Source of the DNA: Camelus ferus | Taxonomy: Eukaryota | Reading direction: 5' to 3' | DNA length: 64,000 nucleotides | Assembly (NCBI RefSeq): GCF_009834535.1 | Contig: NC_045712.1 | Coordinates: 26,474,001-26,538,000, forward strand | Shown here: piece after piece, positions 34,306-64,000 of the stretch | Position numbering within the stretch: the first letter of the stretch is position 1 | Layout: each line of letters begins with the position of its first letter | Translations under genes and position numbers: made by a program | Notes under the pieces: generated by a model | Databases searched by the model: none | Seen by the model: the letters and a program-made list of their open reading frames with translations, nothing else | What the model was told of the DNA's origin: nothing

Positions 34306-34311
34306 TTTATT
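34306..34311 (-). terminator. Poly(A) signal, gene A
   Basis: AATAAA about 100 nt after the stop. Confidence 0.7.
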
Positions 34312-34413
34312 TCAGAATCTGAAACACTGAGCCAGAATAAAAAAGACCCTTAGGACTTCCGGGGGCTCACAATTCAGCAGAGTCCTCTGATGGGCAAGGT
34401 ATCAGCCAATCCT

Positions 34414-36279: not shown

Positions 36280-36319
36280 GGTCCCCGAGTCTGCCTCCTC
36301 CCAGCCCACAGGACCCTCC

Positions 36320-36354
36320 TTTATGCTCAGCCTGGGCCTGATGCAATTGCTCAA
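36320..36354 (-). promoter_or_regulatory. Cathelicidin A proximal promoter: C/EBP site + C/EBP-ATF-like site + TATA-like CATAAA
   Basis: Minus strand TTGAGCAATTGCATCA...GAGCATAAAGG, with CATAAA about 40 nt upstream of the ATG. The same module precedes all four genes. Confidence 0.65.
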
Positions 36355-36912
36355 GCAGGAGCCTTCCCCACCTGCCCCATCCCTGCCCCCGGCCAGGGTG
36401 TGAGCTGGACTTGCCTCAGGCCCCGCTCTTGCCTCAGGGGATTGCTGGGCAGTGGGTGAGGTTGCCTCCTGTGGAAGGTGAAGAAATGGTTTCTCCATCT
36501 CCCTCACAGCATCTCGGCCTCTCCTGGGCCCCATGGGGCAGTTTCATGAGCAGGGTTGCTCCAGAGGGTTGAGTCCTCCAGGAGACGGAGGGACCAGGCT
36601 GTGTCCTAAACCCTCTCGGCCTCCTCACTGTGACCTCCTGAGAATCAAGCTGAAGGAGTGTATTCACCACACAACCTCCATCTCTACACACCGCCTGGCA
36701 CCCAGTAGGCATCTAGTTAAAGTTCGATGAATGGATGACAGCACCACCTCCAACCAAAGCCTGATGCAGTCAGCCAGCACCTGGGCAGACAGTCAAGAAC
36801 CCTCCATCCTGCTCTCTAGACTCAGCCCTCAGCCAGTGAGGGGCTGCGCTCCATCTGTCACCTCTCCTGGATTCTTCTCCACTGCCTTTCTCAACCTAAA
36901 AATGTCTTGTCC

Positions 36913-43589: not shown

Positions 43590-45476
43590 CTACCCTGGGC
43601 GAATTTTATCACCAATGTATCCGATTACTTTGCCAACCTTATCTCGAACCCAGTTCACACCGTCATGGAAGAAATCACGAATCCGGCCAAATAACCCGAC
43701 ACTCTGGAGCTGTGCAGCAGAAAGAAACAGGATTCTCATGAGGATTGACTTAGGGAAAAGACCAGATCCCTCCCCACCTGAAAATCTTCCATCTTGGAAC
43801 ACCGAAGGAGAGTTAAGGCACCATTTGACCTCCTTGTCTGTGTCACTTGGAGCACGTGGTTGAATCATCTCTCCCACAGACAGATGAGGACCAAGGTCCA
43901 GAGATGACAGGGGGCTTCCCAGGGGCACAAACCCATCTCAGAAAAGCTGGACGGGAGCAGGGGCAGAAAGGTCCTGTCTGTAGTCAGTGCCTCTCAAGCT
44001 TCAGCACACTCAGAAATCCTCAGAAGGGCTCTTAAAATAGAAATTATTGGGATCCACCACACAATGATTCCGTATTTCTGAGTCAGGCCTGAGAATCAGC
44101 CTTTTTCTCTAGTTGCCAAGAGGGGAGCCCACTGAGAGAACCACTGCTCTAAGGGACTGCAGAGCCCGGCCTGGAGACCTGGGGCTCCGGTGAGGGAGAC
44201 CCAGGGAAGGAGGGCTCTCCTGCCACTACAGGGATGGCACAGAGGGGAATTGGTCCAAAGGCTGTTCCACACACCACCTCCATCAGTAGCCCCTGCAGCC
44301 CAGAAGGGATCACTCACCTCATTACATGTTATATCGAAGTTGTCCCTGAGCTGGTACAGGTTGACTGTCCCCACACACTGTTTCACCACCTGGAAGGGGA
44401 GACTCCAGGTCACACTGGAACCCCTGAGCCATAAACACCCCTCCTCACCCCAGGGGCTGCTAACCACCACCCGCCCCAAGCCTTCTGTTCGGGTCTTGGG
44501 AGCGACCCACCAGGGCCCTAAGCCCCCAGCCTCACCCCATTCTCCTTGAAGTCACACTGCTCCGGTGGCAGCAGTGTCTCCTGGGGACACACGGTCTCCT
44601 TCACCGTGAAGCTCACAGGCTTTGGGGCATCTAGGTCCTCGTCCTGCTGAAGGATCAAAGTGGGGAGACTGGCTCAGGCTCATGCTTCTATGTGTGACCT
44701 GTGTCCCTGCCCCCAGCAGGACAAGCCCCTTTGAGAGCCTGTCCCATGTGCCTGGCCCCGGGTTGGGAGCTGGGCGCAGAGGGGAGGAGGACACAGCCTG
44801 GTCCTGGGCTCCCAGGCACACAGGGAGCAGGAGGGGACCTCAGACCCGCTCTCCTGAGGGGCAGCTCCCCTTGGAGGGGCTGAGGGCAGTCATGGGACAC
44901 CTGCAAGAAAAGACCTTGTCACCGGAACCCCAGGGCTGAGCACAGCCCTTCTCTGGTGGGGACACAATGGAGTGCACAGGGTACTGGAAGCAAGTAAGTC
45001 ACATCCCAGAGCCAGTGACCCCGGCATATCCCCTAGAACCCCCAGGAGTCCCTGGAGCCTGAGAGGGCTGTCAGGGCTCTGTTCCCACAGCAGAGATGCC
45101 AGGCAGAAGGCTCTCACAACGGGAGGGGACCCAGCTCTGGGAGGATTTCTGTAGAGGTGGGATCCCACTTAGAGGGAGTGGTGCCTTCCTGACAGGAGGT
45201 ACAGCGCGAGCAAAGGGAGGGACAGTGTGGCCAAGCCTGGCGGGAGACACCTCCCTCCCCAGCCCCTCCCCGACTCACAGCCTTGGGCGGCAGGTCCAGC
45301 TCCAGGAGGCGGTAGAGATTGGGGTCTGAGGACTGCTCATTGAGGCGATCCACAGCTCGAAGCACCGCCTCCCTATAGCTCAGGGCCTGGGCGCTGGCCC
45401 AAGTCACCGTTAGTCCCAGCAGCAGTAGCCACAGTGACGAGCGGCCCAGGGAGAGGCTGGCCCTCTGGGTCTCCAT
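43590..45476 (-). CDS. Cathelicidin gene B (CAMP/CATHL family), 165-aa precursor with alpha-helical PMAP-37/BMAP-34-like peptide; exons 45476-45279, 44643-44536, 44389-44318, 43709-43590
   Basis: 198/108/72/120-nt exons, all GT-AG, open frame, four cathelin Cys. Exon 4 LQSV|[35 protein letters not shown] has a terminal Gly (amidation donor). Confidence 0.95.
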
Positions 45477-45516
45477 GGTCCCCGAGTCTGCCTCCTCCCA
45501 GCCCACAGGACCCTCC

Positions 45517-45551
45517 TTTATGCTCAGCCTGGGCCTGATGCAATTGCTCAA
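45517..45551 (-). promoter_or_regulatory. Cathelicidin B proximal promoter module (C/EBP + TATA-like)
   Basis: Identical TTGAGCAATTGCATCA...CATAAA module. Confidence 0.65.
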
Positions 45552-48500
45552 GCAGGAGCCTTCCCCACCTGCCCCATCCCTGCCCCCGGCCAGGGTGTGA
45601 GCTGGACTTGCCTCAGGACCTGCTCTTGCCTCAGGGGATTGCTGGGCAGTGGGTGAGGTCTGCCTCCTGTGCAAGGTGAAGAAATGGTTTCTCCATCTCC
45701 CTCACAACATTTTGGCCTCTTCTGGGCCCCGTGGGGAGTTTCATGGGCAGGGTTGCTCCAGAAGGATGAGTCCTCCAGGAGACGGAGGGACCAGGCTGTG
45801 TCCTACACCCTCTCGGCCTCCTCACTGTGACCTCCTCTGAATCAGGCTGAAAGAGTGTATTCACCACACAACCTCCAGCTCCTGGTTCTCCTGGTCCCCA
45901 ACAGGCACTCAGTTAACATATGATAAATAGATGGCAGGACCACCCCCATCTAGTGCCTTTCACACCCATCCACTCCCTAGGCAGACATCAGGGCCACACC
46001 GTCCTATTCTACGGACCCAGGCCTCAGCCAGTCAGGGCATCTCCTCTACTGTCCCCTCTTCTGGATTCTTCTCCTTTGCCTTCTTCACTCTAAAAATGTC
46101 CTGTCCCAGCCCCTTCCAGATGCACACTGTTCCCCTTACCCAGACAGCCAGTAAGAGAAGGCTCATCTACACTCTGACCCCACTATTTGTCCTCTTTCAA
46201 CTCAAGGTCCATGCCTGCTTAACAGCTTTCGAATGATACAACGGCCATGCTGAAGCCTTGTCCTTGCCTTCACAGGTGCCAGGGACCCCTCTGTCTACTG
46301 AAACTGCCCCCTCCCCCATTCTCCCCTGGGACCACCTTCCTGGGTCCACTTCCTGGCCTCCCGGGTGCCTCCTGCTCTGTCTAATCTAAGTACTCAACTT
46401 TTAATAAAACTTTTACTGCAGGGCTTGCACACGTGATCTGTACAGCTTCTCAAAGCAGTTCTCATGCATTCTGGGCACATCCCTTCCTCAGATACTAGTT
46501 ATCAGGGACACACATCACTGGTCTGTGGGTCCGAGGCAACACTCCTGTGAACACCCCTGGTTGTCAGCACAGGGCTGTCTGGGGCTGTTGGCTAGGAGCC
46601 CTCACGGGAGCCCTGAGCTGAGAGCCTGGGAACCCCCACCTGCTCCTTCTCTGAGGGCCCTCCCTGTCCCCACTGTCACCCCTGCCCTGTCCTACCACCA
46701 TCTCCTCTCCTCTGAAGTGTAGCCACAACCTCCAGACTCCACCTTTTCTGGTTCCAGGCTCTTCCCACACCACAGCCCAGTGTTCCCTGCCATTGTCCAG
46801 GGGTCCATCAAACCTCCCGCCTTGAGTCAGGGGCTCAGGGTCTGGATCAGGTTGTCCTCAGGTGCTCACCTGCAAAACCCTGTGTCAGGCCGCCAAGTCC
46901 ACCCCAACCTCTCAGGCCCCTCGGAGCCTCTGCTCTTCTCATATCGCTACACCTGATCCCTCTGACTGCCGTGACTTTTCAGTTTTGTGAAGCCTTATCT
47001 GACCTTCAACCAGAGAAAACAGCAACTCCCCATCTTAGCTCCCACAGCCTCACAAAGTCTCTTCTGACTTGTCCCCAAGGTACTCCCTCTCCAGGGCTCA
47101 GGTTGAGACACCAGGATGGAGTGGCCAGAGAGGGAGGAGGAGGGGGTCCAGCTGGGAAAGTGAATGAGCCGATGTGTTAGAGGATCCCAGAGACCAGATG
47201 CCAATTCTAATCCAGTGTCCCATGGAATGGCCCTGAGACTGAAGGCCTGGGATAGGCCATGGCCACCTGTGACCTGGGGACTCTGGGCAACGGAATGGGG
47301 CACCTCAGAAGGTAACAGCCTGGTCGGATGTGCTGGTTTCGCACTCACCCTTCGAAAAGGAAGGAGAGAGGGGCTTCTGTGCAACCTGGTGTCACAGTCC
47401 GGGTGTTGCCCCAGTGGCCTCTTGGTCAAGCTGTATCCTTTTCCCAAGAAGGAGGAAGAAAAGGAGGTGATTGCAGTAGAAAATAACTAGCAAAACCCAC
47501 GGTGACCGGGTATCAGATCCCCTTGAAATCCTCTCTGTGCTTTCCTGCCTCTGCACCTTTGCGTTTGCTCAGACTTTGGACCGCAGTCTGGGTCCTTGGA
47601 ATGTTGCCTGTCAGGTCCTCAGACTACAACTGCCTGGATGGGGGTGTGCTGTCCCTGCCTCTAGCATCTGGCTTTCCTGGTTTGTCCTCATAGCCTGTCA
47701 GAGCAGACGTGTTCTCAGGAAAGGCTCCTCTGCCCTTGTCCCCAGGTTGGTTGGCCCCTGACTCCACATCTGATCCTTGAGAAACCCTCATGCACCCGTC
47801 GTGCCAACAACCTCAGGGAATGAGCCCTGATCTGCACGGCCCGCCTGCTTTTCTCCTCCCAACCATCCTTCCTGTCTGTGAGACTCCAGAGGCTCCAGAG
47901 CAATGGAACTGGACCAGAACCCCAAACTGTGCCCCTAACCTTGGAAATATCCACCAGCTCTGACTGCCCATTTGATGAGGAAAATGAGACCCATGGGCTA
48001 CGTCATTCCATCAAGGACCTCCTACTCAAAAAATGACAGACTGGGGACATGGAGTCATGCCCCTCAATGACCCACCACCTGTCCTTTTCACAGGGACAAG
48101 GGGAAGGTTTCAGGCCCTGCCCCCTGCCCCCTGCCCTCTGCAGGGACCTGCGATGGCAGCCATGGTGCTGTGAAGGCAGGGATTTGGGTCGAGGGTGAGG
48201 GTCAGGACCCTCCTCTCAGGGTCAGCTTCCTCTTTCCCATGGACCAATTCAGCTGAAACTAGAAGCTGAAAGAGAACTACGAGGTTAAGTCATCCTGGAA
48301 AAGACAGCAGAAGGCATTTAGTGTCTGCAGGCGTGTCTGGGCGCCTACAGGATCGTCACCTGCCAGGACCCACTTATCGGTCAGCACACTAGGCAGCGGT
48401 CCTAGCCCCTGAGACATCTAGGGATCCACAGAAAGTTTTACTTTAATTGTTTAAAATCACAGATGAAAACACTGACATATTGATGAATACATAAGATGAA

Positions 48501-49107
48501 AAGCAGCTTAGGTTATATTCATGTTTTATATGAATGCAGTTGTATAATACAAGTTTTAAGAGTATTTTGTGAATGAAGAGGCCCAGGAAGATAGAAGTTC
48601 CAGGGCCTGAAAAGTCCCAGTGTACCCCTGTCTCCCTTGTCAGCATCCTTCCCTGCTCTGGTGGGTAGGCACAGGGGCAGAGTGACACCAGGAGAACAGG
48701 GGGTGCGAATGGGGCACAAGGAACCCCCACTCTCGGGCGGAAGCTAGAGAGTCCATGGGGCTGGGGAACAGGACTCGGGATGTGACTGGCACGGGCATCC
48801 CTCAGTCGGAGCACAGCAAGCCTGGAGGCCCCCCAGTGTGTCAGCTGCTGACTAGTAAGGACCAGACGCTAAAGGCTCGTGCAGACGGGCCAGTTCTGCT
48901 CGCTCAGGACAGAATGACATGTATTTCCCTCCTGCTGTTCTGATGGGGATTCCAAGTGTCTCTCTGGGTCCCTGCTCCGACACACGAGCCAGATCTGTGC
49001 CGTGAGATGGACCCAGACTAACTATGGTCTCCTAGACTCCATCAGCCTCCGCCTCAGATTCAGCCCCTATGTGGTACTCGACCTTGTTTTTCGAGCTAAG
49101 CCATTGA

Positions 49108-49207
49108 NNNNNNNNNNNNNNNNNNNNNNNNNNNNNNNNNNNNNNNNNNNNNNNNNNNNNNNNNNNNNNNNNNNNNNNNNNNNNNNNNNNNNNNNNNNNN
49201 NNNNNNN
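49108..49207. other. 100-N assembly gap near the centre of the inverted duplication
   Basis: Exactly 100 Ns, the usual convention for a gap of unknown size. Confidence 0.95.
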
Positions 49208-51552
49208 ACAGTTTTGTTCTGGTCCAGTTCCATTGCTCTGGAGCCTCTGGAGTCTCACAGACAGGAAGGATGGTTGGGAGGAGAAAAGGAGCCGGGACGT
49301 CCAGATCATGGCTAATTTCCTGAGTTGTTGGCACGACGGGTGCATGAGGGTTTCTCAGGATCAGATGTGGAGTCAGGGGCCAACCAACCTGGGGCAAGGC
49401 AGAGGGGCCTTTCCTGAGAAACACGTCTGCTCTGACAGGCTGTGAGGACAACCAGGAAAGTCAGATGCTAAGCAGGGACAGCAACACCCCCATCCAGGCA
49501 GTTGTAGTCTGAGGACCTGACAGGCGACCTTCCAAGGACCCAGACTGCGGTCCAAAGTCTGAGCAAACGCAAAGGTGCAGAGGCAGGAAGCACGAGAGGA
49601 TTTCAAGGGGATCTGATACCCGTCACCGTGGGTTTTTGCTAGTTATTTTCTACTGCAATCACCTCCTTTTCTTCCTCCTTCTTGGGAAAAGATACAGCTT
49701 GACCAAGAGGCCACTGGGGCAACACCCGGACTGTGACACCAGGTTGCACAGAAGCCCCTCTCCTTCCTTTTCGAAGGGTGAGTGCGAAACCAGCACATCC
49801 GACCAGGCTGTTACCTTCTGAGGTGCCCCATTCCGTTGCCCAGAGTCCCCAGGTCACAGGTGGCCATGGCCTATCCCAGGCCTTCAGTCTCAGGGCCATT
49901 CCATGGACACTGGATTAGAATTGGCATCTGGTCTCTGGGATCCTCTAACACATCGGCTCATTCACTTTCCCAGCTGGACCCCCTCCCTCCTCCCTCTCGG
50001 CCACTCCATCCTGGTGTCTCAACCTGAGCCCTGGAGAGGGAGTACCTTGGGGACAAGTCAGAAGAGACTTTGTGAGGCTGTGGGAGCTAGATGGGGAGTT
50101 GCTGTTTCTCTGGTTGAAGGTCAGATAAGGCTTCACAAAACGAAAAGTCACGGCAGTCCGAGGGATCAGGTGTAGCGATATGGAAGAGCAGAGGCTCCGA
50201 GGGGCCTGAGAGGTTGGGGTGGACGTGGCGGCCTGACACAGGGTTTGCAGTGAGCACCTGAGGACAACCTGATCCAGACCCTGAGCCCTGACTCAAGGCG
50301 GGAGGTTGATGGACCCTGGACAATGGCAGGGAACACTGGGCTGTGTGTGGGAAGAGCCTGGAACCAGAAAAGGTGGAGTCTGGAGGTTTGGCTACACTTC
50401 AGAGGAGAGGAGATGGTGGTAGGACAGGGCAGGGTGACAGTGGGGACAAGGGCCCTCAGAGAAGAAGGAGCAGGTGGGGTTCCCAGGCTCTCAGCTCAGG
50501 GCTCCCGTGAGGGCTCCTAGCCAACAGCCCCAGACAGCCCTGTGCTGACAACCAGGAGTGTTCACAGAGTGTTGCCTCGGACCACAGACCAGTGATGTGT
50601 GTCCCTGATAACTAGTATCTGAGGAAGGGATGTGCCCAGAATGCATGAGAACTGCTTTGAGAAGCTGTACAGATCACGTGTGCAAGCCCTGCAGTAAAAG
50701 TTTTATTTAAAGTTGAGTACTTAGATTAGACAGAGCAGGAGGCACCCAGGAGGCCAGGAAGTTGGACCCAGGAAGGTGTCCCAGGGGAGAATGGGGGAGG
50801 GCAGTTTCAGTAGACAGAGGGGTCCCTGGCACCTGTGAAGGCAAGGACAAGGCTTCAGCATGGCCGTTGTATCATTCGAAAGCTGTTAACAGGCATGGAC
50901 CTTGAGTTGAAAGAGGACAATAGTGGGGTCAGAGTGTAGATGAGCCTTCTCTTACTGGCTGTCTGGGTAAGGGGAACAGTGTGCATCTGGAAGGGCTGGG
51001 ACAGGACATTTTTAGAGTGAAGAAGGCAAAGGAGAAGAATCCAGAAGAGGGGACAGTGGAGGAGATGCCCTGACTGGCTGAGGGCTGGGTCCGCAGAATA
51101 GGACGGTGTGGCCCTGATGTCTGCCTAGGGAGTGGATGGGTGTGAAAGGCACTAGATGGGGGTGGTCCTGCCATCTATTCATGATATGTTAACTGAGTGC
51201 CTACTGGGGGCCAGGAGGCCCAGGAGCTGGAGGTTGTGTGGTGAATACACTCTTTCAGCCTGATTCTGAGGAGATCACAGTGAGGAGGCCGAGAGGGTGT
51301 AGGACACAGCCATTCCCTCTGTATCCTGGAGGACTCAACCCTCTGGAGCAACCCTGCCCATGAAACTCCCCATGGGGCCCAGGAGAGGCCGAGATGCTGT
51401 CAGGGAGATGGAGAAACCTTTTCTTCACCTTCCACAGGAGGCAGACCTCACCCACTGCCCAGCAATCCCCTGAGGCAAGAGCGGGGCCTGAGGCAAGTCC
51501 AGCTCACACCCTGGCCGGGGGCAGGGATGGGGCAGGTGGGGAAGGCTCCTGC

Positions 51553-51587
51553 TTGAGCAATTGCATCAGGCCCAGGCTGAGCATAAA
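51553..51587 (+). promoter_or_regulatory. Cathelicidin C proximal promoter module (C/EBP + TATA-like)
   Basis: TTGAGCAATTGCATCA...CATAAA intact. Confidence 0.65.
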
Positions 51588-51626
51588 GGAGGGTCCTGTG
51601 GCTGGGAGGAGGCAGATTCGCGGACC

Positions 51627-53476
51627 ATGGAGACCCAGAGGCAAGCCTCTCCCTGGGCCACTGCCACTGTGGCTACTGCTGCTGGGACTAGCGGTGCTTG
51701 GGCCAGCGCCCAGGCCCTGAGCTATAGGGAGGCGGTGCTTCGAGCTGTGGATCGCCTCAATGAGCAGTCCTCAGACCCCAATCTCTACCGCCTCCTGGAG
51801 CTGGACCTGCCGCCCAAGGCTGTGAGTCGGGAGGGCTGGGAGGGAGGCGTCTCCCGCCAGGCTTGGCCACACTGTCCCTCCCTTTGCTCGCGCTGTACCT
51901 CCTGTCAGGATGGCACCTCTCCCTCTAGGTGGGATCCCACCTCTAACAGAAATCTTCCCAGAGCTGGGTCCCTTCCCGTCGTGAGAACCTTCTGAGTGGC
52001 ATCTATGCTGTGGGAACAGAGCCCTGACAGCCCGCTCAGGCTCCAGGGACTCCTTGGGGCTCCAGGGATACGCCGGGGTCACTGGCTCTGGGATGTGACT
52101 TCCCTGCTTCCAGTCCCCTGTGCACCCCATTGTCTTCCCACCAGGGAAGGGCTGTGCTCAGCCCGGGTGTTCCAGTTTCAAGGTCTTTCCCTGCAGGTGT
52201 CCCCTGACTTCCCTCAGCCTCTCCAAGTAGAGTTGCCCCTCAGGAGAGCGGGTATGAGTTCCATTCCTGCTCCCTGTGTGGTGGGAGCTCAAGACTAGGC
52301 TGTGTCCTCCTCTCCTCTGCACCCAGCTCCCAGCCCAGGGCCAGGCACATGGGACGGGCTGTCAAGGGGGCTGTCCTGCTGGGGGCAGGGACACAGGTCA
52401 CACAAAGAAGCATGAGCCTGAGCCAGTCTCCCTACTTTGATCCTTGAGCAGGACGAGGACCCAGATGCCCCGAAGCCTGTGAGCTTCACGGTGAAGGAGG
52501 ACCGTGTGTCCCAAGAGGACACAGCTGCCTCCGGAGCAGTGTGACTTCAAGGAGAATGGGGTGAGGCTGGGGGCTTCGGGCGCTGGTGGGTGCCTCCCAA
52601 GACCCAAACAGGAGCCTTGGGGCAGGTGGTGGTTAGGAGCCCCTGTGGTGAGTCTGGGTGTTTATGGCTCAGGGGTTCCAGTGTGACTTGGAGTCTCCCC
52701 TTCCAGGTGGTGAAACAGTGTTTGGGGACAGTCAACCTGTACCAGCTCAGGGACAACAACTTCGATATAACATGTAATGAGGTGAGTGACCCCTTATGGG
52801 CTGCAGGGGCTACTGATGGAGGTGGTGTGTGAAACAGCCTTTGGACCAATTCCCCGCTGTGCCATCCCTGTAGTGGCAGGAGGGACCTCCTCCCCTGGCT
52901 CCCCCTTACCTGAGCCCCAGGTCTCCAGGCCGGGCTCTGCAGTCCCTTAGAGCAGTGGTTCTCTCAGTGGGCTCCTCTCTTGGGAACTAGAGAAAAAGGC
53001 TGATTCTCACGCATGACTCAGACCTACAGAATCATTGTGTGATGTGGAGCCCAGTAATTTCTATTTTAAGAGCCCTTCTGAAGGATTTCTGAGTGTGCTG
53101 AAGCTTGAGAGGCAGTGACTAGAGACAGGACCTTTCTGCCCCTGCTCCCGTCCTGCTTTTCTGAGATGGGTTTGTGCCCCTGGGAAGCCCCCTGTCATCT
53201 CTGGACCTTGGTCCTCATCTGTCTGTGGGAGTGATGATTCAACCACGTGCTCCAAGTGACACAGACAAGGAGGTCTAATGGTGCCTCAAGTCTCCTTCGG
53301 TGTTCCAAGATAGAAGATTTTCAGATGGGGAGGGATCTGGTCTTGTCCCTAAGTCAGTCCTCACAAGAATCCTGTTTCCTTCTGCTTCACAGCTCCAAAG
53401 TGTCGGGTTATTTGGCCCGATTCTTGGTATCGTCCGTGCCGGTGTGAAATTGGTTCTAGATAAGTTTGGCAAATAA
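51627..53476 (+). pseudogene. Cathelicidin gene C (pseudogene as assembled, possibly intact gene with sequencing indels); exons 51627-51821, 52452-52560, 52707-52781, 53393-53476
   Basis: Exon 1 is 195 nt: three single-base deletions scramble the signal peptide ([29 protein letters not shown]) and then restore frame. Exon 2 is 109 nt: a +1 G near 52500 leads to TGA at 52542-52544. Exon 3 is 75 nt (extra AAC). Exon 4 LQSV|GLFGPILGIVRAGVKLVLDKFGK*. Splice sites, promoter module and AATAAA (53558) are intact. Confidence 0.75.
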
Positions 53477-53557
53477 TCGGATAGATTGGTGATAAAATTC
53501 GCCCAGGGTAGAGTCCTAATGATCACCTAACTCTGGCTCAGTTGTTCAAACTCTGGA

Positions 53558-53563
53558 AATAAA
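53558..53563 (+). terminator. Poly(A) signal, gene C
   Basis: AATAAA at the position homologous to gene B. Confidence 0.65.
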
Positions 53564-56500
53564 TTCTTATGAATTTCAAATTCACCTGTCTCTTGTCCTA
53601 CTCTTACCAGGGGTCCTTAACCCCCATTGCCCTCTTGAGTGTGTGTGTGTGTGTGCGCGTGTGTGGTCACTACCGTGAACACAGAGATGGGTGTGGCAGC
53701 TGTTCCTTCCAGGAGGGCAGGGGGAGGCAGCAGGGCCGGGAGGGACAGGACAGGGCTCCATTCTCAGGAACCCCATGCCCTTCACACTCCCCCGCCCTCC
53801 TCCTCCTCCACCAAGTAGGGGCTTAAAGAGACCTAGTCTGTGTGCAGTGCTGCTGGGGATGCTGTTCCTCCTGGTATGGAGGTGACAGTCCAGGAGGACC
53901 AGGTCGCTTGTTAATCACTCGGGGAGACACAGCTCTGTCTCCTGCTGGTGGGCTCTAAGGTCAGCCTGCAGGTACAATGTCCAGATTGTTCCACTTCCCT
54001 CACAATCTGAACACTGAAAGAGCCCACCCTTCTTGGCTTTTGCTCTGGGCATTGAGACACATCAGTCTTTCTCCTGCGGGGTCTCAGATTTCAGATGTGG
54101 GCTTGTGTTCAGGGATCCAATGGTACCACAATTGGCACCATTAGAAGCAAGCCTCCTGCTCATCGGGGTGAAGGGCTCTGCCTGAGTGAGAGACACACAC
54201 AGTGACACACAGGCCACATGTCTGTTTGCCTGGGGGTTTCAGACACTGTCCCTGTCCTGCCCACTCCCCACTCTGTAGCTGACCTTTGCTGGGGGGCAGA
54301 CTGGAATCACGGGGGAGGCGGCAGTCCCGGGAGCAGCCTCAACCAACCATCGCTGGGACTTTTCCCTCATTGGTGGAAACGTCTCTTCTGTTCCTCACTC
54401 CTTGGGGGGCCCACTCCCAGATGTGTCCCCCCTCCCTGAGGTCCCCAGCTGGGTGGAGCCCCTGTCCCCGCTTCAGTGACCTGTCTATTGACTTGTCCTC
54501 TTCTGATGTCGATTCTGCCCGGTCTCACTTCTCTATTTTTCTGCTGGTGCTTCAAAGGAATCGCCTCCCAGAGCACCTGCTTCCTCTTGAATGCTGGCCT
54601 GAGCTCTGCTCCTGGGCCAACCTGCACCAACACACAGAGCCCCGTGTGTCAGAGGGACAGCGGGCGGGACCGCGCAGAGCACGTGCTCTGTAATCTGTCA
54701 GGCTCGTCTGTTCTTGGGGAGCAGTTGGGGCTGATTTCAGGCAGGTTAGAGGAACCCATGCTTCTCACTCTACGTCACCCCAGGTTGAGTGAGGTTCTAC
54801 AGAGGAAACTAAGGGAATTCCTTCTGTCTGCCGCTGGGTACTTCATTGCGACAGGCAGAACAGAGACCGGGGGAGGATCTGAACCACGTCACTGAGCCCC
54901 CCAGCCCCAGACAGGAGCCTGCAGGTGCTGTGGGGGCTGGGGGCCCTGTTGGGGATGGGTGCTGAGGCTCAGGCTTCCGAGGGCAGACCCTAGGAGTGGT
55001 CTGGGATTGGCAGTGTGGGGACCGCCTGAGAGGGCTGGAGCGCGGTAAGGGCTGAAACTGGGAGTGTGTGCGAAGGAATCGGTCTGTCATAACCCCCGTT
55101 ATTAGGTTGCTGCGGAGGGAGGAGCGGAACTCCTCACTCTGCCTGGCCCGCTGGCCCCTGGGAGCTGTGGGAGGGCAGAGTGCTGGGGCAGAGGCGGGGC
55201 CCAGGTCTGAGCCCATTCTCAGAATGAGCTAAGTTCAAGGTTGTTGTGTGGGTTTGGCCGCTGCAGCTGTTCAGCCTCCAAGACATCCATTTACACCTGT
55301 GCATGAACAAGGTCCCTGTGCTCAGTGGGCAGGGTTGTGGGCTGTGATGCTTGCCCCGGAAGACAGCCCCCAAAATTTATCTTGTTCACTCTGTCTGTGC
55401 CTCCCTAGTGGTTCTAACTGGGGCCACAGTTGTGGACATTCGCCCTCACTGGCCCTGAAATAGGTAAATGAACGGTGACTGTCCCTGCTGAGCAAGGCAT
55501 CCCCTGCTTGGAGGTCACGTCCACTGGGGAGAGATTTTCTATGGAGAGGAGGGGAGATGCCCTCCTCTCTCCAGCCCCATCTCACTGAGTTTGGTAACTG
55601 CTCTCAGAGCAGCTCTGGGACCCTTCCCATCGCCAAGGCAAAACCTGCTTCTGGGGTTGTCATAGTGACAACACTGTGAAGAGCACCTGGGCCCACGGAG
55701 TCCTACACCCATCGTGCCTCCTCCTCCTGCTCCTCCTCCCTCCTCACCCACTTCTTTTTAATTGTAAGCATTGTTAAGGGACATATCCTCCTTATAAAAT
55801 ATTCAAGCAATCCTAGTACAAATACACTCCTTTTGACAACTTGCTTTCCTGCCTCACGCATCACAATCTCCACATTAGAAACAACCTCCATTCATCAATC
55901 GTGTGAGTGTCTGTTCTGATGTTTTTTCTAGACATGTATATACATATAGGCACATAAAGATACCGTGTCTTGCTTTATGGTGACTGATGTTTACATAAAT
56001 GGAATCAGTTAGTACGTTTATTTTGCAATTGGCCTTTTCCCCTTAAAGATACATCTGGCAACTTTCTAGTTTTAAAACCTTCAATTGAAATATTACAACT
56101 ACATAAGAAAAACACACCACTGATAAATGGACAGCTTGCTGAGTGCTTGCTATGTGAACGCCAAAGTGTAATCAGCACCCAGAAGTCTCCTCCCCCTTCT
56201 ACCCTTAACCATGACCCCGACTTTGAACGCCACAGATCAGTGATGCCAGATTTTGAAATGTGTAGAAAATAGAACCATACCGTATATACGCTTTTCAGGT
56301 AATTTCTTCATGCAACATGTTTGTGAGAATCCTCCGTGTTATTGTGTGTAATTATCTTCGTTCATATTTTGTTGCTAAGTTGTAGTCCCGCTGTATAAAT
56401 ATACCAGAATACGCTTATTCTTTTACTTGTGAAGGATATTTGGGTAGTTGCCAGCTCATTTTTGAAACGGCTGCACTGTAGTCCATATGGTGGACATAGC

Positions 56501-59294
56501 ATTCGCACCAATACGTGTCTCAAGGGTTTCTAGTTCCCCAACTCGGCCCAACAAAGATACAAGGAAGCACCATGGTTTCTTCCTCTCCCATGCACGTGAG
56601 TGAGGCTCCCGACAAGTGGGACTTCAGGGGGACGCCGACAATGGCCTGTGCTGTGGCAGGCTCTCCATGTGAGCATGTCCTGGGGGTGGCTATGGAGTGG
56701 ATGGCTGCTGTCCCTCTTTCCCCCAGGAGTCTGGAAGGCTCTGTAGAGACTGGGACTCTGATCCTCATGTCCAAGTTCGTATGGGAGGAGTTTCTCTATG
56801 GAGGAGAAGAGGGCCTCCCATGCATGTGTAAGAAATCTCCCATTTTACAAACCAGGAGAAAGAGGTGCAGTTGGTGAAGGTCTGGTTTAAGGTCACGTAT
56901 GTGCTCCCCAGGTTGGGCAGAAGGCAGGACCAGAGGACAGGTCGCTCAGCCCTGACCCTGGCTCCTTCTCTTGTACCATTTTGAAGTCCAGGGCTTGGGG
57001 CTGGGATAAGGAAGTGTCTAAACACAGGTGAGACTGTGCTTTTTCCAGTTGGGGGTTTTAACTGCAGGATGGGATGTCTGCCTCAACCAGACTGGGATGG
57101 GAAATAGAGGGGGATGGGAAAGGAGGGAACCCACGTAGGGTGCCAGGCGGTGGAAACACACTCTTACCAGCTCCAGCAGGACCGTCTGCTCCCACCTCTT
57201 GGCTGGGGTGTCCTCTGTTGGGTTGGGGGGAACGTTAGGAGAGAACCCAAGGCCTAGCCTGACCATCTCGAGGCACAGCTACTGTGACCTTGGAGACCCT
57301 CCCAGTCCTGACCCGGCTCCTTAGACCCCCTTCCCTCTCACCCTGCTCCTCTCGCTGTCTAAGCAAGAACTCAGCCAGGGAATGCAGGAAATGGAGGCAG
57401 TGCCCAGATGCGCCTGTCTACAGCTCACCCTCCCGCTCCCCGTGTGGGCTTCTCAGTTGTGTCTGAGACAATGAGAGCTGGGCTCCCACTCATTGCTGCT
57501 GCGAGTTCCCACCAGGGCAGAGTTTTCCCAAAGAAGTCACAGCTGATAAGAGGCCAACCAATGATCAGACACATGTCTGCTGGACTCCAGAGTCTAAGGA
57601 CCCATCGAGCCCTCGGGGGCCGCTTTCTGCCCTGTTGATAATAAGAGATGCTGTTTCTGGACCATCAATCCTGGTCTCTTTGGTCCCAACTTCTTTCCGT
57701 GGGTTGACTCCTCTATCAGACCTCATCCTTGATCAGCCACCTGTCCCCATGGAAGGATGGGGAAGGGGACCTCAGTCCTAAGGTTTAGGAAACACAAAGG
57801 TGCAGAGGCAGGAAAGCACAGGGAGGATTTCAGGGGGACCTGATACCTGGTCACCGTGGCTATTGCTAGTTATTTTCTCCTGTAATCACCTCCTTTTCCA
57901 ACTCTGACTTGGGAAAATGATACAGCTTGACCAAGAGGCCACTGGGGCAACACCTGGACTGTGTTACCAGGTTGCACAGAAGCCCCTCTCTCCTTCCTTC
58001 TCCATGGCTGAGAGTGCAACCAGGGCCATCTGTCCAGACTATCGCCTTCTGACTTGCCCCAGCCAAACACCGAGAATCCCACAGGTCACCTGAGGCCAAT
58101 TGGTACCCCAGTCATTCCATGGGAGACTGGATTAGAACTTGTGTCATGGTCTCTGGGCCACTGTAACACATTGGCTCATTCATTCTCCCAGCTGAGCTCC
58201 CTTGTCCTCCCACACTGGCCACCTCAGAGCCCTGGAGAAGGGGTCACTTGGGGACAAGTCAGAACAGACTTCCTGAGGCTGTGGGAGCCAAGATAGGAGT
58301 TGCTGTTTCTCTGGTTGAAGGTCAGACAAGGCTTCACATGGTGGAAGGTCACAGCAAGCAGAGGGATCAGGTGCAGAGTCGGGAGGAAGGGAAAGAGCTC
58401 GAGACAGGCCTGAGAGGTCGGGGTGCACGTGGCAGCCTGACCTGAGCATGCGGGGCAGCGAGTGAGGACCGTGGGAAGCATCAAGGTTCAGACCCTGATG
58501 CCGGGAGGAGGTGTGTGAGCTGCTGAAGGCAGGGGGTGAAATGGCCAAATCGGCAATTTGATGGAGCCCCCAGACACAATGTGGAAGGAGAATTGATTTC
58601 TAGAAGAGCCTGGAACCAGAGACGGTGGAGTCTGGAGGTTGTCACTACACTTCAGAGGAGAGGGGGTGGTGGCAGGACAGGGCAGGGGTTACGGGGGGAC
58701 AGGGAGGGCCCTCAGAGGAAGAAGGAGCCAGTGGGGGCTCCCAGGCTGCCAGCTCAGGGCTCCCGTGGGGGCTCCCAGCCGACAGCCCCAGACAGCCCTG
58801 TGCGGACAGCCAGGGTTGTTCACAGGAGTCTTGACTCAGAGACACAGACCAGTGATGTGTGTCCCTGGTAACTGGTATCTGAGGAAGGGATGTGCCCAGG
58901 AATGTGTGAGGACTGCGAGGAGAAGCCATCTGGGTGCACCTGTGCAAGCCCTGTGTATTACGAAGAGGGTCCTGGGAGGAGACGGAGAAAAAAGAGGAAA
59001 CAAGGTGGCAGGAGGGGACTCAGGAGAGCGACACCAGCAGAGAATGGGGCAGGAGGCGGTTGCGGGAGGACAGAGGGAAGCCCAGAGCCTGTGTAAATAA
59101 AGACAGCGCGTCAGCATGGGTTTTGGATCCAGCGACGGCTGGCCAGCTTATAGGGCCTTGAGTGTGAGAGAAAACACATTGGGGTCACGATGCGGGTGAT
59201 CCGATCTCAGGCTTGGTTGTGGGAAATCTCGGGCTTGGTTTTGGGAGGCAGGACAGCAGGACAAGATAGTGGGGTCTGGGGACACGACATTTTT

Positions 59295-60738: not shown

Positions 60739-60773
60739 TTGAGCTATTGCATCAGGCCCAGACTGAGCATAAA
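60739..60773 (+). promoter_or_regulatory. Cathelicidin D proximal promoter module (variant C/EBP site + TATA-like)
   Basis: TTGAGCTATTGCATCA...CATAAA; one substitution at 60745 relative to the other three copies. Confidence 0.6.
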
Positions 60774-60813
60774 GGAGGGTCCTGTGGGCTGGGAGGAGGC
60801 AGACTCGGGGACC

Positions 60814-62661
60814 ATGGAGACCCAGAGGGCCAGCCTCTCCCTGGGCCGCTGGTCACTGTGGCTACTGCTGCTGGGACTAGCGGTGCCTTGGGCCAGCGCC
60901 CAGGCCCTGAGCTATAGGGAGGCGGTGCTTCGAGCTGTGGATCGCCTCAATGAGCAGTCCTCAGACCCCAATCTCTACCGCCTCCTGGAGCTGGACCTGC
61001 CGCCCAAGGCTGTGAGTCGGGGAGGGGCTGGGGAGGGAGGCGTCTCCCGCTAGGCTTGGCCACACTGTCCCTCCCTTTGCTCGCGCTGTACCTCTCCCTC
61101 TAGGTGGGATCCCACCTCTCACAGACATCCTCCCAGAGCTGGGTCCCCTCCCCTTGTGAGAGCCTTCTGCCTGGCATCTCTGCTGTGGGAACAGAGCCCT
61201 GACAGCCCTCTCAGGCACCAGGGACTCCTGGGGGCTCCAGGGATACGCTGGGGTCACTGGCTCTGGGATGTGAATTCCCTGCTTCCAATCCCCTGTGCAT
61301 GCCATTGTCTCCCCACCAGAGAAGGGGTGTGCTCAGCCTGGAGCTTCCAGTGACAAGGTCTTTCCCTGCAGGTGCCCCTGACTTCCCTCAGCCCCTCAAA
61401 GGGGGATGTGCTTCTCATGAGATGGGGTCTGAGGTCCCCTCCTGCTCCCTGTGTGCCTGGGAGCCCAGGACCAGGCTGTGTCCTCCTCCCCTCTACACCC
61501 AGCCCGCAGCCCAGGGCGAGGCACATGGGATGGGCTTTCAAGAGGGCTGTTCTGCTGCGGGGCAGGGACACAGGTCACCCAAGGAAGCATGAGCCTGAGC
61601 CAGTCTCCCCACTTCGATCCTTGAGCAGGATGAGGACCCAGATGCCCCGAAGCCTGTGAGCTTCACGGTGAAGGAGACCGTGTGTCCCAGGAGGACACAG
61701 CTGCCACCGGAGCAGTGTGACTTCAAGGAGAAAGGGGTGAGGCTGGGAGCTGAGAACGCTGGCGGATGCCTCCCAAGGACCCGAACAAGAGGCTTCGGAG
61801 GGTGGTTAGCAGCCCCTGGGGTGAGGCTGTGTGTTTATGGCTCAGGGATTCCAGTCTGAACTGGAGGTTCCCCTTCCAGGTGGTGAAACAGTGTTTGGGG
61901 ACAGTCACTCTGGACCAGGTCAAGGACCAAATAGACATCAGTTGTAATAAGGTGAGTGGCCCTTCTTGTTTTGAGCTGCTCTGGGGAGAGGTGTGGAACA
62001 TCATTTGGACCAGTTTTGTTCTTGTTCATTCAGGGCTTCCTACCCTGGCTCCCCCCTTACCTGAGCCCAAGTCTCCAGCCTGGGCTCTGCAATCCCTTAG
62101 AGCAGTGGTTTGTTCTCTAAGTGGCATTATCACCTGGGAACTATTGGAAAGGCAGCTTCTTAGTCCACATTCAGACCTACTGAGACAAAGTTGGGGTGGG
62201 TCCCAGAAATTTGTATTTTAAGAAGCCTTCCTGGGGATTCTGACTGTGCTGAAGTTTGAGAGGCACTGACTACAGTAATGGGATTTCTGCTTCTGCTTCT
62301 GTCCAGCTGTGGTGGCCAGTGATCCGGGGAGGCCTTGGCATCTCTGTGTCCTGGTTTTCTCATCTGTCTATGGGAGTAGGGATTCAACCACATGCTCCAA
62401 AGTTATAGCCACAGAGTGAATGGGACCCAAGCCTCCAGGAGTGGCTCAGGAGTAGGATGTGTAGAAAGGGACCTGAATCATTTTGATTCTGGATCAGTAC
62501 TGACAAGAAGCCTGTTTCTTCCTGGTTCACAGCTCCAGAGTGTAAGGGGATTTTTTCCACCACCATTCCCACCTGGACCCTTCCCATTTCCCCCTTTCCC
62601 ACCAATCCCGCCAATACCACCATTTCCATTTCCGCGGCCGTTTGTTAGAAGACGACGGTGA
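60814..62661 (+). CDS. Cathelicidin gene D (inverted copy of gene A), 168-aa precursor with the same Pro/Phe-rich peptide; exons 60814-61011, 61629-61736, 61880-61951, 62533-62661
   Basis: 198/108/72/129-nt exons, GT-AG, open frame. Signal [29 protein letters not shown]. Exon 4 translates identically to gene A. Confidence 0.93.
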
Positions 62662-62763
62662 AGGATTGGCTGATACCTTGCCCATCAGAGGACTCTGCTG
62701 AATTGTGAGCCCCCGGAAGTCCTAAGGGTCTTTTTTATTCTGGCTCAGTGTTTCAGATTCTGA

Positions 62764-62769
62764 AATAAA
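62764..62769 (+). terminator. Poly(A) signal, gene D
   Basis: AATAAA at the position homologous to gene A. Confidence 0.7.
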
Positions 62770-64000
62770 TTGTTCTGAAAACAACTTCCTCCGGTATCTC
62801 CCACTTACTGTCACCAGGTCCTAAACGCTGGGAGGCCGAGGTTGTGTGTGGGTGTGTTTGCGTGTGTGTGTCTGTGAATGTGGTCACTTCCGTGAACGCA
62901 GAGATGGGTGTGGCAGCTGTTCCTTCCAGGATGGCGGGGGGAGGCAGCAGGGCCGGAAGGGACAGGACAGGGCTCCATTCCCAGGAACCCCATGCCCTTC
63001 ACACTCCCCCGCCCTCCTCCTTCTCCATCCAGTAGGGTCTTAAGGAGACTTTGTCTGTGTGCAGGGCTGCTTAGGATGCTGTTCCTGCTGGTATGGAGGT
63101 GACAGTCCAGGAGGACCAGGCCACTTGTTAATCAGTCAGGGAGACACAGCTCAGTTTCCTGCTGGCGGGCTCTAGGGTCAGCCTGCAGGTACAATGTCCA
63201 GATTGTTCGACTTCCCTCACAATCTGAACTCTGCAAGAGCCCACCCTTCCTGGCTTTTGCTCTGGGCATTGAGACACATCAGTCTTTCTTCTGCGGGGTC
63301 TCAGATTTCAGGTGTGGGCTTGTGTTCAAGAATCAAATGGTACCACAATTGGCACCATTAGAAGCAAGCCTCCTGTTCATCGGGGTGAAGGGCTCTGCCT
63401 GAGTGAGAGACACACACAGTGACACACAGGCCACATGTCTGTTTGCCTGGGGGTTTCAGACACTGTCCCTGTCCTGCCCACTCCCCACTCTGTGGCTGAC
63501 CTTTGCTGGGGGGCAGACTGGAATCACGGGGGAGGCGGCAGTCCCGGGAGCAGCCTCAACCAACCATCGCTGGGACTTTTCCCTCATTGGTGGAAACGTC
63601 TCTTCTGTTCCTCACTCCTTGGGGGGCCCACTCCCAGATGTGTCCCCCCTCCCTGAGGTCCCCAGCTGGGTGGAGCCCCTGTCCCCACTTCACTGACCTG
63701 TCTATTGACTTGTCCTCTTCTGATGTCGATTCTGCCCGGTCTCACTTCCCTATTTTTCTGCTGGTGCTTCGAAGAAATCGCCTCCCAGAGCACCTGCTTC
63801 CTCTTGAATGCTGGCCTGAGCTCTGCTCCTGGGCCGACCTGCACCAACACACAGAGCCCCCTGTGTCAGAGGGACAGCGGGCGGGACCGCGCAGAGCATG
63901 GGCTCTGTAATCTGTCAGGCTCGTCTGTTCTTGGGGAGCAGGTGGGGCTGATTTCAGGCAGGTTAGAGGAACCCATGCTTCTCACTCTACGTCACCCCAG

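What the first reader, a model, noticed from the sequence alone, without database searches (positions are those of the whole stretch)
53393..53511. Candidate new short amphipathic cathelicidin peptide GLFGPILGIVRAGVKLVLDKF(GK) in gene C
Seen in sequence: exon 4 of gene C reads LQSV|GLFGPILGIVRAGVKLVLDKFGK* (TAA at 53474-53476). That is 23 aa after the elastase-type Val cleavage site, net charge about +3. Hydrophobic residues (2/3, 6/7, 10, 14, 17, 21) and charged residues (11, 15, 19, 23) fall on opposite helical faces. It derives from the 35-aa gene B exon by a 1-nt deletion that puts the stop right after ...F-G-K. Established: a C-terminal Gly plus basic residues is the amidation signal of cathelicidins such as PR-39 and Bac5, so the product would be a 21-mer ending in Phe-amide. 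If the deletion is a sequencing error, a second new stop (TAC>TAG, 53482-53484) gives ...KFGKVIG*, which also ends in Gly. Inference: in style this peptide resembles frog-skin AMPs (maculatin/caerin/XT-7 type) more than the mammalian cathelicidins I know, and may be undescribed.
Basis: partly seen in the sequence, partly recalled or inferred. Interest (0 to 1): 0.85.

Follow-up and report, generated by a model that had tools for sequence, protein, structure and literature searches.

The report
Known camel cathelicidin 23-mer peptide exon
This is the last exon of a camel antimicrobial-peptide (cathelicidin) gene.

Summary
Window 53393-53476 reads LQSV|GLFGPILGIVRAGVKLVLDKFGK*, with TAA at 53474-53476, a downstream TAG at 53482-53484 and AATAAA at 53558-53563.

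It is exon 4 of one of four cathelicidin genes in the window, which is the Camelus ferus assembly GCA_009834535.1.

The peptide is not new. The exact 23-mer is listed in Table S2 of Panteleev et al. 2022 (PMC9146984) under "23-residue cathelicidins (MAP-like)" for C. dromedarius and C. bactrianus, with Lama orthologs. Four RefSeq proteins named "antibacterial peptide PMAP-23-like/PMAP-36-like" end in it. I found no paper that tested it.

The dromedary and Bactrian orthologs are intact (153 and 154 aa, all introns gt..ag). Dromedary RNA contigs show exon 2-3-4 splicing and a poly(A) tail at 53580.

The window's copy carries three 1-nt deletions in the signal peptide and a 1-nt insertion in exon 2. 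Neither ortholog nor any paralog compared shares them, and no read contig supported them. I judge them more likely local assembly errors than a C. ferus-specific loss, but this is unresolved.

The 23-mer's nearest relative is the llama/alpaca Vp26-like peptide. That peptide already uses the TAG stop, so the 1-nt deletion came second.

The scan also noted this stretch in another reading (s1-149329).

The parts
51627..51821 (+). Gene C exon 1 (ATG, signal peptide, start of the cathelin domain). In this assembly three 1-nt deletions, after 51639, 51662 and 51696, scramble the hydrophobic core to [25 protein letters not shown] before the frame is restored.
   Evidence: Alignments. Translation. Pfam PF00666 E=1e-13 on residues 29-64. 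The orthologs L002 and L004 have an intact LWLLLLGL core.
52452..52560 (+). Gene C exon 2 (cathelin domain). An extra G at 52499 shifts the frame in this assembly only.
   Evidence: RNA contigs carrying the gene-C-specific T at 52530 lack the extra G (X25 records 11 and 12). The DNA contigs of X2 lack it too. The donor at 52560 is joined to 52707 in RNA.
52707..52781 (+). Gene C exon 3 ([25 protein letters not shown]). The 3-nt GAC/AAC insertion (DNN) is shared with C. bactrianus and absent in the dromedary.
   Evidence: Pfam PF00666 positions 75-97. Both flanking introns are spliced in X25 record 13.
53393..53476 (+). Gene C exon 4 coding part: LQSV, then the 23-residue peptide GLFGPILGIVRAGVKLVLDKFGK, then TAA.
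   Evidence: Identical in L002 and L004. DNA contigs X2 record 7 and X3 record 28, and RNA contigs X25 record 13 and X26 record 14, show no differences here. Listed in PMC9146984 Table S2.
53477..53580 (+). 3' UTR holding the older, now out-of-frame TAG (53482-53484) and AATAAA (53558-53563). The poly(A) tail is added after 53580.
   Evidence: In one search an X25 contig has a loose end of 21 A behind 53580. One search shows the TAG is shared with alpaca Vp26.
51437..51492 (+). Alternative upstream exon (U2). Its acceptor is at 51437, and a GC donor (GAG|GCAAGT) is spliced to exon 2 at 52452, skipping exon 1.
   Evidence: X25 record 10 joins 51490 to 52450 with 3 ambiguous letters.
51394..51626 (+). 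Upstream in-frame ATG and the 78-codon N-terminal extension used by the RefSeq 231-aa dromedary model. In the window the frame is lost at a deletion after 51599.
   Evidence: P0164..

Best explanation
The stretch is the fourth exon of the Camelus '23-residue MAP-like' cathelicidin gene. RefSeq names it 'antibacterial peptide PMAP-23-like'. It is a paralog in the PMAP-37/BMAP-34-like (Vp35/Vp26) alpha-helical lineage.

Shown: the gene has the standard four-exon cathelicidin layout and lies in the cathelicidin cluster. It is intact in the dromedary and the domestic Bactrian camel, with a 153/154-aa precursor made of signal peptide, cathelin domain and 23-mer. In the dromedary it is transcribed, spliced and polyadenylated.

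Inferred from the family (Panteleev 2022; bovine and porcine cathelicidins): the pro-form is stored in neutrophil granules. An elastase-type cut after the Val of LQSV frees the peptide. The C-terminal Lys is trimmed and the Gly is converted to an amide, giving a 21-mer ending in Phe-amide. That product would act as a hydrophobic, weakly cationic membrane-active helix.

The peptide is a predicted, catalogued sequence, not a new one. The window is the C. ferus reference assembly. Its copy carries private frameshifting indels in exons 1 and 2 that are more likely local assembly errors than biology.
For: Exact peptide: PMC9146984 Table S2 lists it for C. dromedarius (JWIN01033265.1, JDVD01079641.1) and C. 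bactrianus (JARL01035147.1). The Lama orthologs read GILGPILRIVAAGLDWLQHKRGK.

RefSeq proteins P0160, P0164, P0165 and P0169 end in the peptide.

Intact orthologs: translating L002 and L004 exon by exon gives 154 and 153 aa, with gt..ag at every intron. Pfam PF00666 scores E=4e-48 and 1e-46 over positions 1-100 of 101.

RNA: X25 record 13 joins exon 2, exon 3 and exon 4 and ends in poly(A). X26 record 14 crosses the exon 3-4 joint at word depth 293. Fourteen runs marked 'RNA?' hold 0.54-0.92 of the exon-4 words.

Window identity: L005 (C. ferus GCA_009834535.1) is 100% identical.

Private indels: they are absent from both orthologs and from paralogs B and D.
- No contig with the extra G at 52499 was seen in any of the four runs.
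- The same assembly holds a B/C mosaic gene 80 kb away.
- It has a 100-N gap 2.4 kb upstream.
- B and C start 6 kb apart here, against about 45 kb in the other two species.

Structure: AlphaFold puts a helix on peptide residues 4-21, at low confidence.
Against: - Nothing here shows the mature peptide, its cleavage, its amidation or its activity.
- The hydrophobic moment does not clearly exceed shuffles (p about 0.09), and the model has a mean pLDDT of 53.
- One dromedary RNA contig splices an upstream exon straight to exon 2 and skips the signal-peptide exon. Exon 1 inclusion could not be judged, because dromedary exon 1 is under 97% like the window.
- X2 record 2 (51915-52035, no differences, single-copy depth) carries the window-private substitutions at 51995, 51996 and 52005. 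At least part of the odd 5' haplotype is therefore real and not an error.
Confidence: 0.85

Rival explanations
1. In the wild camel (C. ferus) this gene really is an unprocessed pseudogene. A diverged 5' tract with three deletions destroys the signal peptide and an insertion breaks exon 2. The exon-4 ORF is then a relic in this species, although the gene works in the dromedary and the Bactrian camel.
For: The indels are in the reference sequence. No gene is called at this place in the C. ferus annotation (L005), and no C. ferus protein with this C-terminus was found. Panteleev's Table S2 lists the 23-mer for the dromedary and the Bactrian camel but not for C. ferus. X2 record 2 independently carries the window-private substitutions at 51995, 51996 and 52005.
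Against: About 14 private events fall within 400 bp, against about 6 in the other 1900 bp. That is far too many for a lineage less than about 1 My old (divergence time from my own knowledge), and no donor paralog matches them. Most of the indels (5 of 7) shorten or lengthen a short run of one base. No contig supports the extra G at 52499 in X2, although that run shares other window-private states. The assembly is visibly disturbed here, with a gap and a mosaic duplicate.
Confidence: 0.35
2. One reading: a previously undescribed cathelicidin peptide.
For: No main-text hit for the peptide string or for its RefSeq accessions in the paper library. The 2026 dromedary AMP paper did not include it.
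Against: The exact sequence is printed in Table S2 of PMC9146984, and four RefSeq records carry it.
Confidence: 0.03
3. The locus is transcribed mainly as isoforms that lack exon 1 (upstream non-coding exons joined to exon 2). Even in the dromedary, little or no secreted precursor would then be made.
For: X25 record 10 splices 51437-51492 to exon 2 through a GC-AG intron. A second loose end joins another upstream exon directly to 52451/2. Exons 2-4 have no in-frame ATG.
Against: These are low-depth contigs from one run. The lay at 97% likeness could not show dromedary exon 1 at all. The ORF is kept intact in two species, with 11 nonsynonymous and 0 synonymous changes against paralog B in the mature part, which is typical of a working, diversifying cathelicidin. 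RefSeq models include exon 1.
Confidence: 0.15

Closest known systems
Camelus '23-residue cathelicidin (MAP-like)' of Panteleev et al. 2022 (Membranes 12:515, Table S2). RefSeq 'antibacterial peptide PMAP-23-like' XP_064352646.1 (C. dromedarius) and XP_074201067.1 (C. bactrianus).
   Same: The mature peptide is identical at 23 of 23 residues. Same gene, same position upstream of the Vp38-like gene, 98.2-98.4% DNA identity over 2.3 kb.
   Different: The window's copy (C. ferus assembly) has four frameshifting indels in exons 1-2 and about 13 private substitutions. C. ferus is not listed for this subgroup in the paper.
Vp26-like cathelicidins of Lamini (alpaca RSFPRIYGIIRDGLNWVRDNFGRVIG, XP 'PMAP-23-like', P0004)
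   Same: Exon 4 is about 90% identical in DNA. It shares the TAC>TAG stop, the Gly-Ile codons and the Phe before Gly. Same cathelin scaffold.
   Different: Gene C has one further 1-nt deletion that ends the peptide three residues earlier (…FGK against …FGRVIG). Its N-terminal half is much more hydrophobic. Vp26 has a higher hydrophobic moment, 0.585 against 0.35.
Vp35-like / PMAP-37 / BMAP-34 type cathelicidins (gene B of this window, [35 protein letters not shown])
   Same: Paralog in the same cluster, head to head with gene C. About 93% DNA identity over the gene. Same GLFG start and the same …DK.GK motif.
   Different: 35 residues against 23. There are 11 nonsynonymous and 0 synonymous differences in the shared mature part. 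B is more polar and more clearly amphipathic.
Frog-skin peptides of the maculatin/caerin type
   Same: Length about 21, GLFG start, Gly/Pro kink, low charge, probable C-terminal amide.
   Different: An unrelated precursor family: this one is a cathelin-domain protein. No significant sequence match to any PDB peptide chain at E<=10. The likeness is convergent style at most.

Membership tests
Cathelicidin (Pfam PF00666 precursor family) | Cathelin-like pro-domain with four conserved cysteines | tested here: met
   Orthologs P0165 and P0160: PF00666 E=4e-48 and 1e-46, profile positions 1-100 of 101. C85, C96, C107 and C124 are invariant in alignment A1. Window pieces: exon 1 E=1e-13, exon 3 E=2e-4. 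Exon 2 reads correctly only in two frames, because of the extra G.
Cathelicidin (Pfam PF00666 precursor family) | Four exons and three introns, with the variable mature peptide encoded by exon 4 | tested here: met
   gt..ag at all three introns in the window and in both orthologs. Introns 2 and 3 are removed in RNA contigs.
Cathelicidin (Pfam PF00666 precursor family) | N-terminal signal peptide | tested here: inconclusive
   Present in the dromedary and Bactrian orthologs (…LWLLLLGL…WASAQ). In the window it is scrambled by three 1-nt deletions. Whether those are real could not be settled.
Cathelicidin (Pfam PF00666 precursor family) | Location in the cathelicidin gene cluster | tested here: met
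   Four cathelicidin genes lie in the window, starting at about 36.3 kb (-), 45.5 kb (-), 51.6 kb (+) and 60.8 kb (+).
Cathelicidin (Pfam PF00666 precursor family) | Proteolytic release of the C-terminal peptide (elastase-type cut after Val) in neutrophils | not testable with these tools
   The LQSV site is conserved in alignment A1 (Q128 and S129 invariant, V130 in 90% or more). Cleavage itself is inferred from the family.
23-residue MAP-like subgroup (Panteleev 2022) | Mature sequence GLFGPILGIVRAGVKLVLDKFGK, or a close ortholog, ending in GK after 23 residues | tested here: met
   Exact match to the Table S2 entries.
C-terminally amidated AMPs | A C-terminal Gly, with or without basic residues, processed by carboxypeptidase and PAM | not testable with these tools
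   The sequence ends in F-G-K. Panteleev 2022 invokes the same logic for the GR ends of VicBac. No peptide-level data.
Amphipathic alpha-helical AMPs | A helix with separate polar and apolar faces | tested here: inconclusive
   Hydrophobic moment 0.35, reached by 9% of shuffles. AlphaFold puts a helix on precursor residues 134-151, but the mean pLDDT is 53.

The most novel reading that the evidence does not exclude
The wild camel has truly lost this cathelicidin within the last million years or so. A short, heavily diverged 5' tract wrecks the signal peptide and a frameshift breaks exon 2, while its domestic sister species and the dromedary keep an intact, expressed gene. That would be a very recent, lineage-specific loss of an innate-immunity effector.
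Probability: 0.3. Interest if true: 0.3.

Novelty: already known. Interest (0 to 1): 0.15.

Why it matters
There is little to gain on novelty, because the sequence is already public in a paper supplement and in RefSeq.

Three things remain open and mildly useful:
- I found no paper that synthesised or detected this peptide. It is an unusually hydrophobic, low-charge cathelicidin, so its activity and haemolysis are unknown.
- The C. ferus reference copy is either misassembled or a very recent pseudogene. This matters for anyone counting immune genes in that assembly.
- The exon shows a clean two-step shortening, from 35 to 26 to 23 residues, with only nonsynonymous change. It is a tidy example of how cathelicidin peptides diversify.

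Tried and rejected
- Protein search with the window's scrambled exon 1: no database protein carries that signal-peptide reading. The real gene-C proteins were hidden in the 90% cluster of P0012 and came out only through the listing of cluster members.
- The look-up of encoding contigs on P0003: not on record.
- Scan of metagenome contigs for the window's private exon-1 string: 0 hits, which is uninformative.
- PDB sequence search with the 23-mer at E<=10: nothing.
- Paper searches for the peptide string and for the five RefSeq accessions: 0 papers. The supplement of the 2026 dromedary paper does not hold the peptide.
- Search for a paralog that could have donated the window's odd 5' tract: none is closer than the orthologs among the seven loci and the window.
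- I set read laying to 97% likeness to keep paralogs out. This also kept out dromedary and Bactrian exon-1 contigs, so exon 1 inclusion in RNA and the exon-1 deletions stayed untested.
- The upstream exon seen as a loose end (…CCTTCTCGAAG) has no exact copy in the window.

Full report
**What is there.** The window holds four cathelicidin genes. A starts near 36.3 kb and B near 45.5 kb, both on the minus strand. C starts at 51.6 kb and D at 60.8 kb, both on the plus strand.

A and D are near-identical inverted copies of a Pro/Phe-rich gene, and B and C lie head to head. Gene C has four exons, all with gt..ag introns:
- exon 1 at 51627-51821
- exon 2 at 52452-52560
- exon 3 at 52707-52781
- exon 4 at 53393-53476, followed by a 3' UTR that runs to 53580

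It gives LQSV, then GLFGPILGIVRAGVKLVLDKFGK, then TAA at 53474-53476. A TAG follows at 53482-53484 and AATAAA at 53558-53563. Against paralog B there is a 1-nt deletion (GGCAAAGTAA to GGCAAA-TAA) and a TAC>TAG change.

**Is it new? No.** Panteleev et al. 2022 (PMC9146984) mined all living camelids. Their Table S2 has a subgroup called "23-residue cathelicidins (MAP-like)". It lists this exact sequence for C. dromedarius (JWIN01033265.1, JDVD01079641.1) and C. bactrianus (JARL01035147.1). It also lists GILGPILRIVAAGLDWLQHKRGK for Lama guanicoe and L. glama.

Four RefSeq proteins end in the peptide:
- XP_064352645.1 / XP_031326099.1 (dromedary, 231 aa, with an N-terminal extension)
- XP_064352646.1 (dromedary, 153 aa)
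- XP_045361925.1 (Bactrian, 283 aa)
- XP_074201067.1 (Bactrian, 154 aa)

They are named "antibacterial peptide PMAP-23-like" or "PMAP-36-like". I found no paper whose main text holds the peptide or these accessions. The 2026 dromedary study tested three other camel cathelicidins. The peptide therefore appears to be catalogued but untested.

**Is the gene real and used?** The window is the Camelus ferus assembly GCA_009834535.1, since L005 is 100% identical to it.

I fetched the orthologous loci from C. bactrianus GCA_048773025.1 (L002) and C. dromedarius GCA_036321535.1 (L004). They are 98.2% and 98.4% identical over gene C.

Translated exon by exon, they give intact precursors of 154 and 153 aa. 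Each has a normal signal peptide, a full cathelin domain (PF00666, E=1e-46 and 4e-48) and the same 23-mer.

Fourteen runs marked "RNA?" (kind guessed), from at least seven studies, hold 0.54-0.92 of the exon-4/3'UTR words. I laid four runs on the gene:
- In dromedary RNA, X25 record 13 joins exon 2, exon 3 and exon 4 and ends in a poly(A) run after 53580.
- X26 record 14 crosses the exon 3-4 joint at word depth 293.
- DNA contigs of X2 and X3 match exon 4 without a difference.

The truncating deletion is therefore real, is shared by at least three Camelus assemblies, and the exon is transcribed and spliced.

**The frameshifts in this window.** Compared with both orthologs and with paralogs B and D, the window's gene C has about 20 private changes, and 14 of them fall within 51599-52005.

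They include 1-nt deletions after 51639, 51662 and 51696. Together these keep the frame but turn the signal-peptide core into [19 protein letters not shown]. An extra G at 52499 breaks exon 2.

No gene is annotated here in C. ferus. Several points favour local assembly error:
- The density of private change is about ten times that of the rest of the gene.
- No paralog among the loci could have donated the tract.
- Six of the seven private indels are deletions, and most change the length of a short run of one base.
- No contig in any of the four runs carries the extra G, while contigs with gene-C-specific markers lack it.
- The assembly is disturbed here in three ways. A 100-N gap lies 2.4 kb upstream. 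B and C start 6 kb apart, against about 45 kb in the other two species. A second locus 80 kb away (L001) holds a mosaic gene. Its exons 1-3 are 99.3% like Bactrian gene C, and its exon 4 is B-like.

One point favours real change. X2 record 2 covers 51915-52035 at single-copy depth with no differences. It carries the window-private bases at 51995, 51996 and 52005, and X2 is a different haplotype elsewhere.

I put assembly error at roughly 60-65% and true C. ferus inactivation at roughly 35%. My single lay of reads used 97% likeness, which excluded the informative ortholog-type contigs over exon 1. This stays open.

**Where the 23-mer came from.** I aligned exon 4 of gene C, gene B, and alpaca Vp26 and Vp35 (L007). 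Vp26 shares gene C's TAG stop, its GGTATC codons and its TTT (Phe) codon.

The sequence of events is therefore a 35-mer (Vp35/PMAP-37 type), then a 26-mer ending in …FG[KR]VIG by TAC>TAG, then the 23-mer by the 1-nt deletion.

Lama species have a 23-mer that also ends in GK. This suggests the deletion predates the camel-llama split. That rests on the paper's table alone.

Between B and C, the mature part differs at 11 codons, all nonsynonymous, with none synonymous. The only silent change is in LQSV. This agrees with the scan's other note on this stretch.

**How it most likely works.** Shown: precursor architecture, conservation, transcription and splicing.

Inferred from the family: storage as a pro-form in neutrophil granules, an elastase-type cut after the Val of LQSV, removal of the C-terminal Lys, and conversion of Gly to an amide. 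That would leave a 21-mer ending in Phe-amide that inserts into membranes as a helix.

Support for the helix is weak. The hydrophobic moment is 0.35, and 9% of shuffles reach it. R11, K15 and D19 do line up at i, i+4 and i+8. AlphaFold places a helix on peptide residues 4-21, but the mean pLDDT is 53.

The peptide is more hydrophobic (mean Eisenberg hydrophobicity 0.34-0.42) and less clearly amphipathic than B or Vp26. The likeness to frog peptides is one of style, with no sequence match in PDB chains.

**Side observation on transcripts.** One low-depth dromedary contig splices an upstream exon (51437-51492) to exon 2 and skips exon 1. The acceptor is at CACAG|GA and the GC donor reads GAG|GCAAGT. 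Loose ends show a further upstream exon (…CCTTCTCGAAG) joined either to 51437 or directly to exon 2.

Copies of that element with 1-2 mismatches lie 1.9-2.8 kb upstream of B, A and D. Gene C's own copy would fall near the N gap, which I left alone.

**Verdict.** Novelty is "already known" and interest is low.

Noticed in passing
window 34300-36400 (-) and 60750-62850 (+): Genes A and D are near-identical inverted copies encoding [38 protein letters not shown]. This is the 'Vp38-like' subgroup of Panteleev 2022 Table S2 (RefSeq 'protegrin-2-like'), so it is also already catalogued. The whole cluster is a large inverted duplication, [A<-B][C->D].
   Followed up: partly
window 45476-51627, N run 49108-49207: B and C start 6.1 kb apart across a 100-N gap. 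In the dromedary and Bactrian chromosome assemblies the same two genes start about 45 kb apart. The C. ferus assembly probably lacks about 40 kb here. The gap was not filled.
   Followed up: partly
L001:9774-12084 (C. ferus CM020784.1, about 80 kb from the window): A mosaic gene. Its exon 1 is B-type, its intron 1 to exon 3 are gene-C-type (99.3% like Bactrian gene C, without the window's private changes), and its intron 3 and exon 4 are B-type. It is annotated as an aberrant 198-aa 'PMAP-23-like' (P0002). It is either an assembly chimera or haplotig, or a gene conversion.
   Followed up: partly
window 47350-47375 (-), 39087-39112 (-), 57981-58006 (+): Copies, with 1-2 mismatches, of a 26-nt element (AGCCCCTCTCTCCTTCCTTCTCGAAG). 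In dromedary RNA this element forms the end of an upstream exon spliced into gene C. The copies lie 1.9-2.8 kb upstream of B, A and D, which suggests a shared non-coding leader exon in these genes.
   Followed up: partly
window 51394-51626: An upstream in-frame ATG gives a 78-residue N-terminal extension (MLSGRWRN…). RefSeq annotates it as isoform X1 in several camel cathelicidins. Its biological meaning is unknown.
   Followed up: no
window 52753-52755: A 3-nt indel in exon 3 (RDNNFD in C. ferus and C. bactrianus, RDNFD in the dromedary) within the cathelin domain of gene C.
   Followed up: yes
window 16930-17373 (-): A long ORF with a repeated …C.GSVGKAL….H… pattern that looks like degenerate C2H2 zinc-finger repeats. 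Seen only in the ORF scan.
   Followed up: no
window 53629-53660: A (GT)n/(GC) microsatellite just 3' of gene C. Most of the 3' differences between the three Camelus assemblies cluster there.
   Followed up: no
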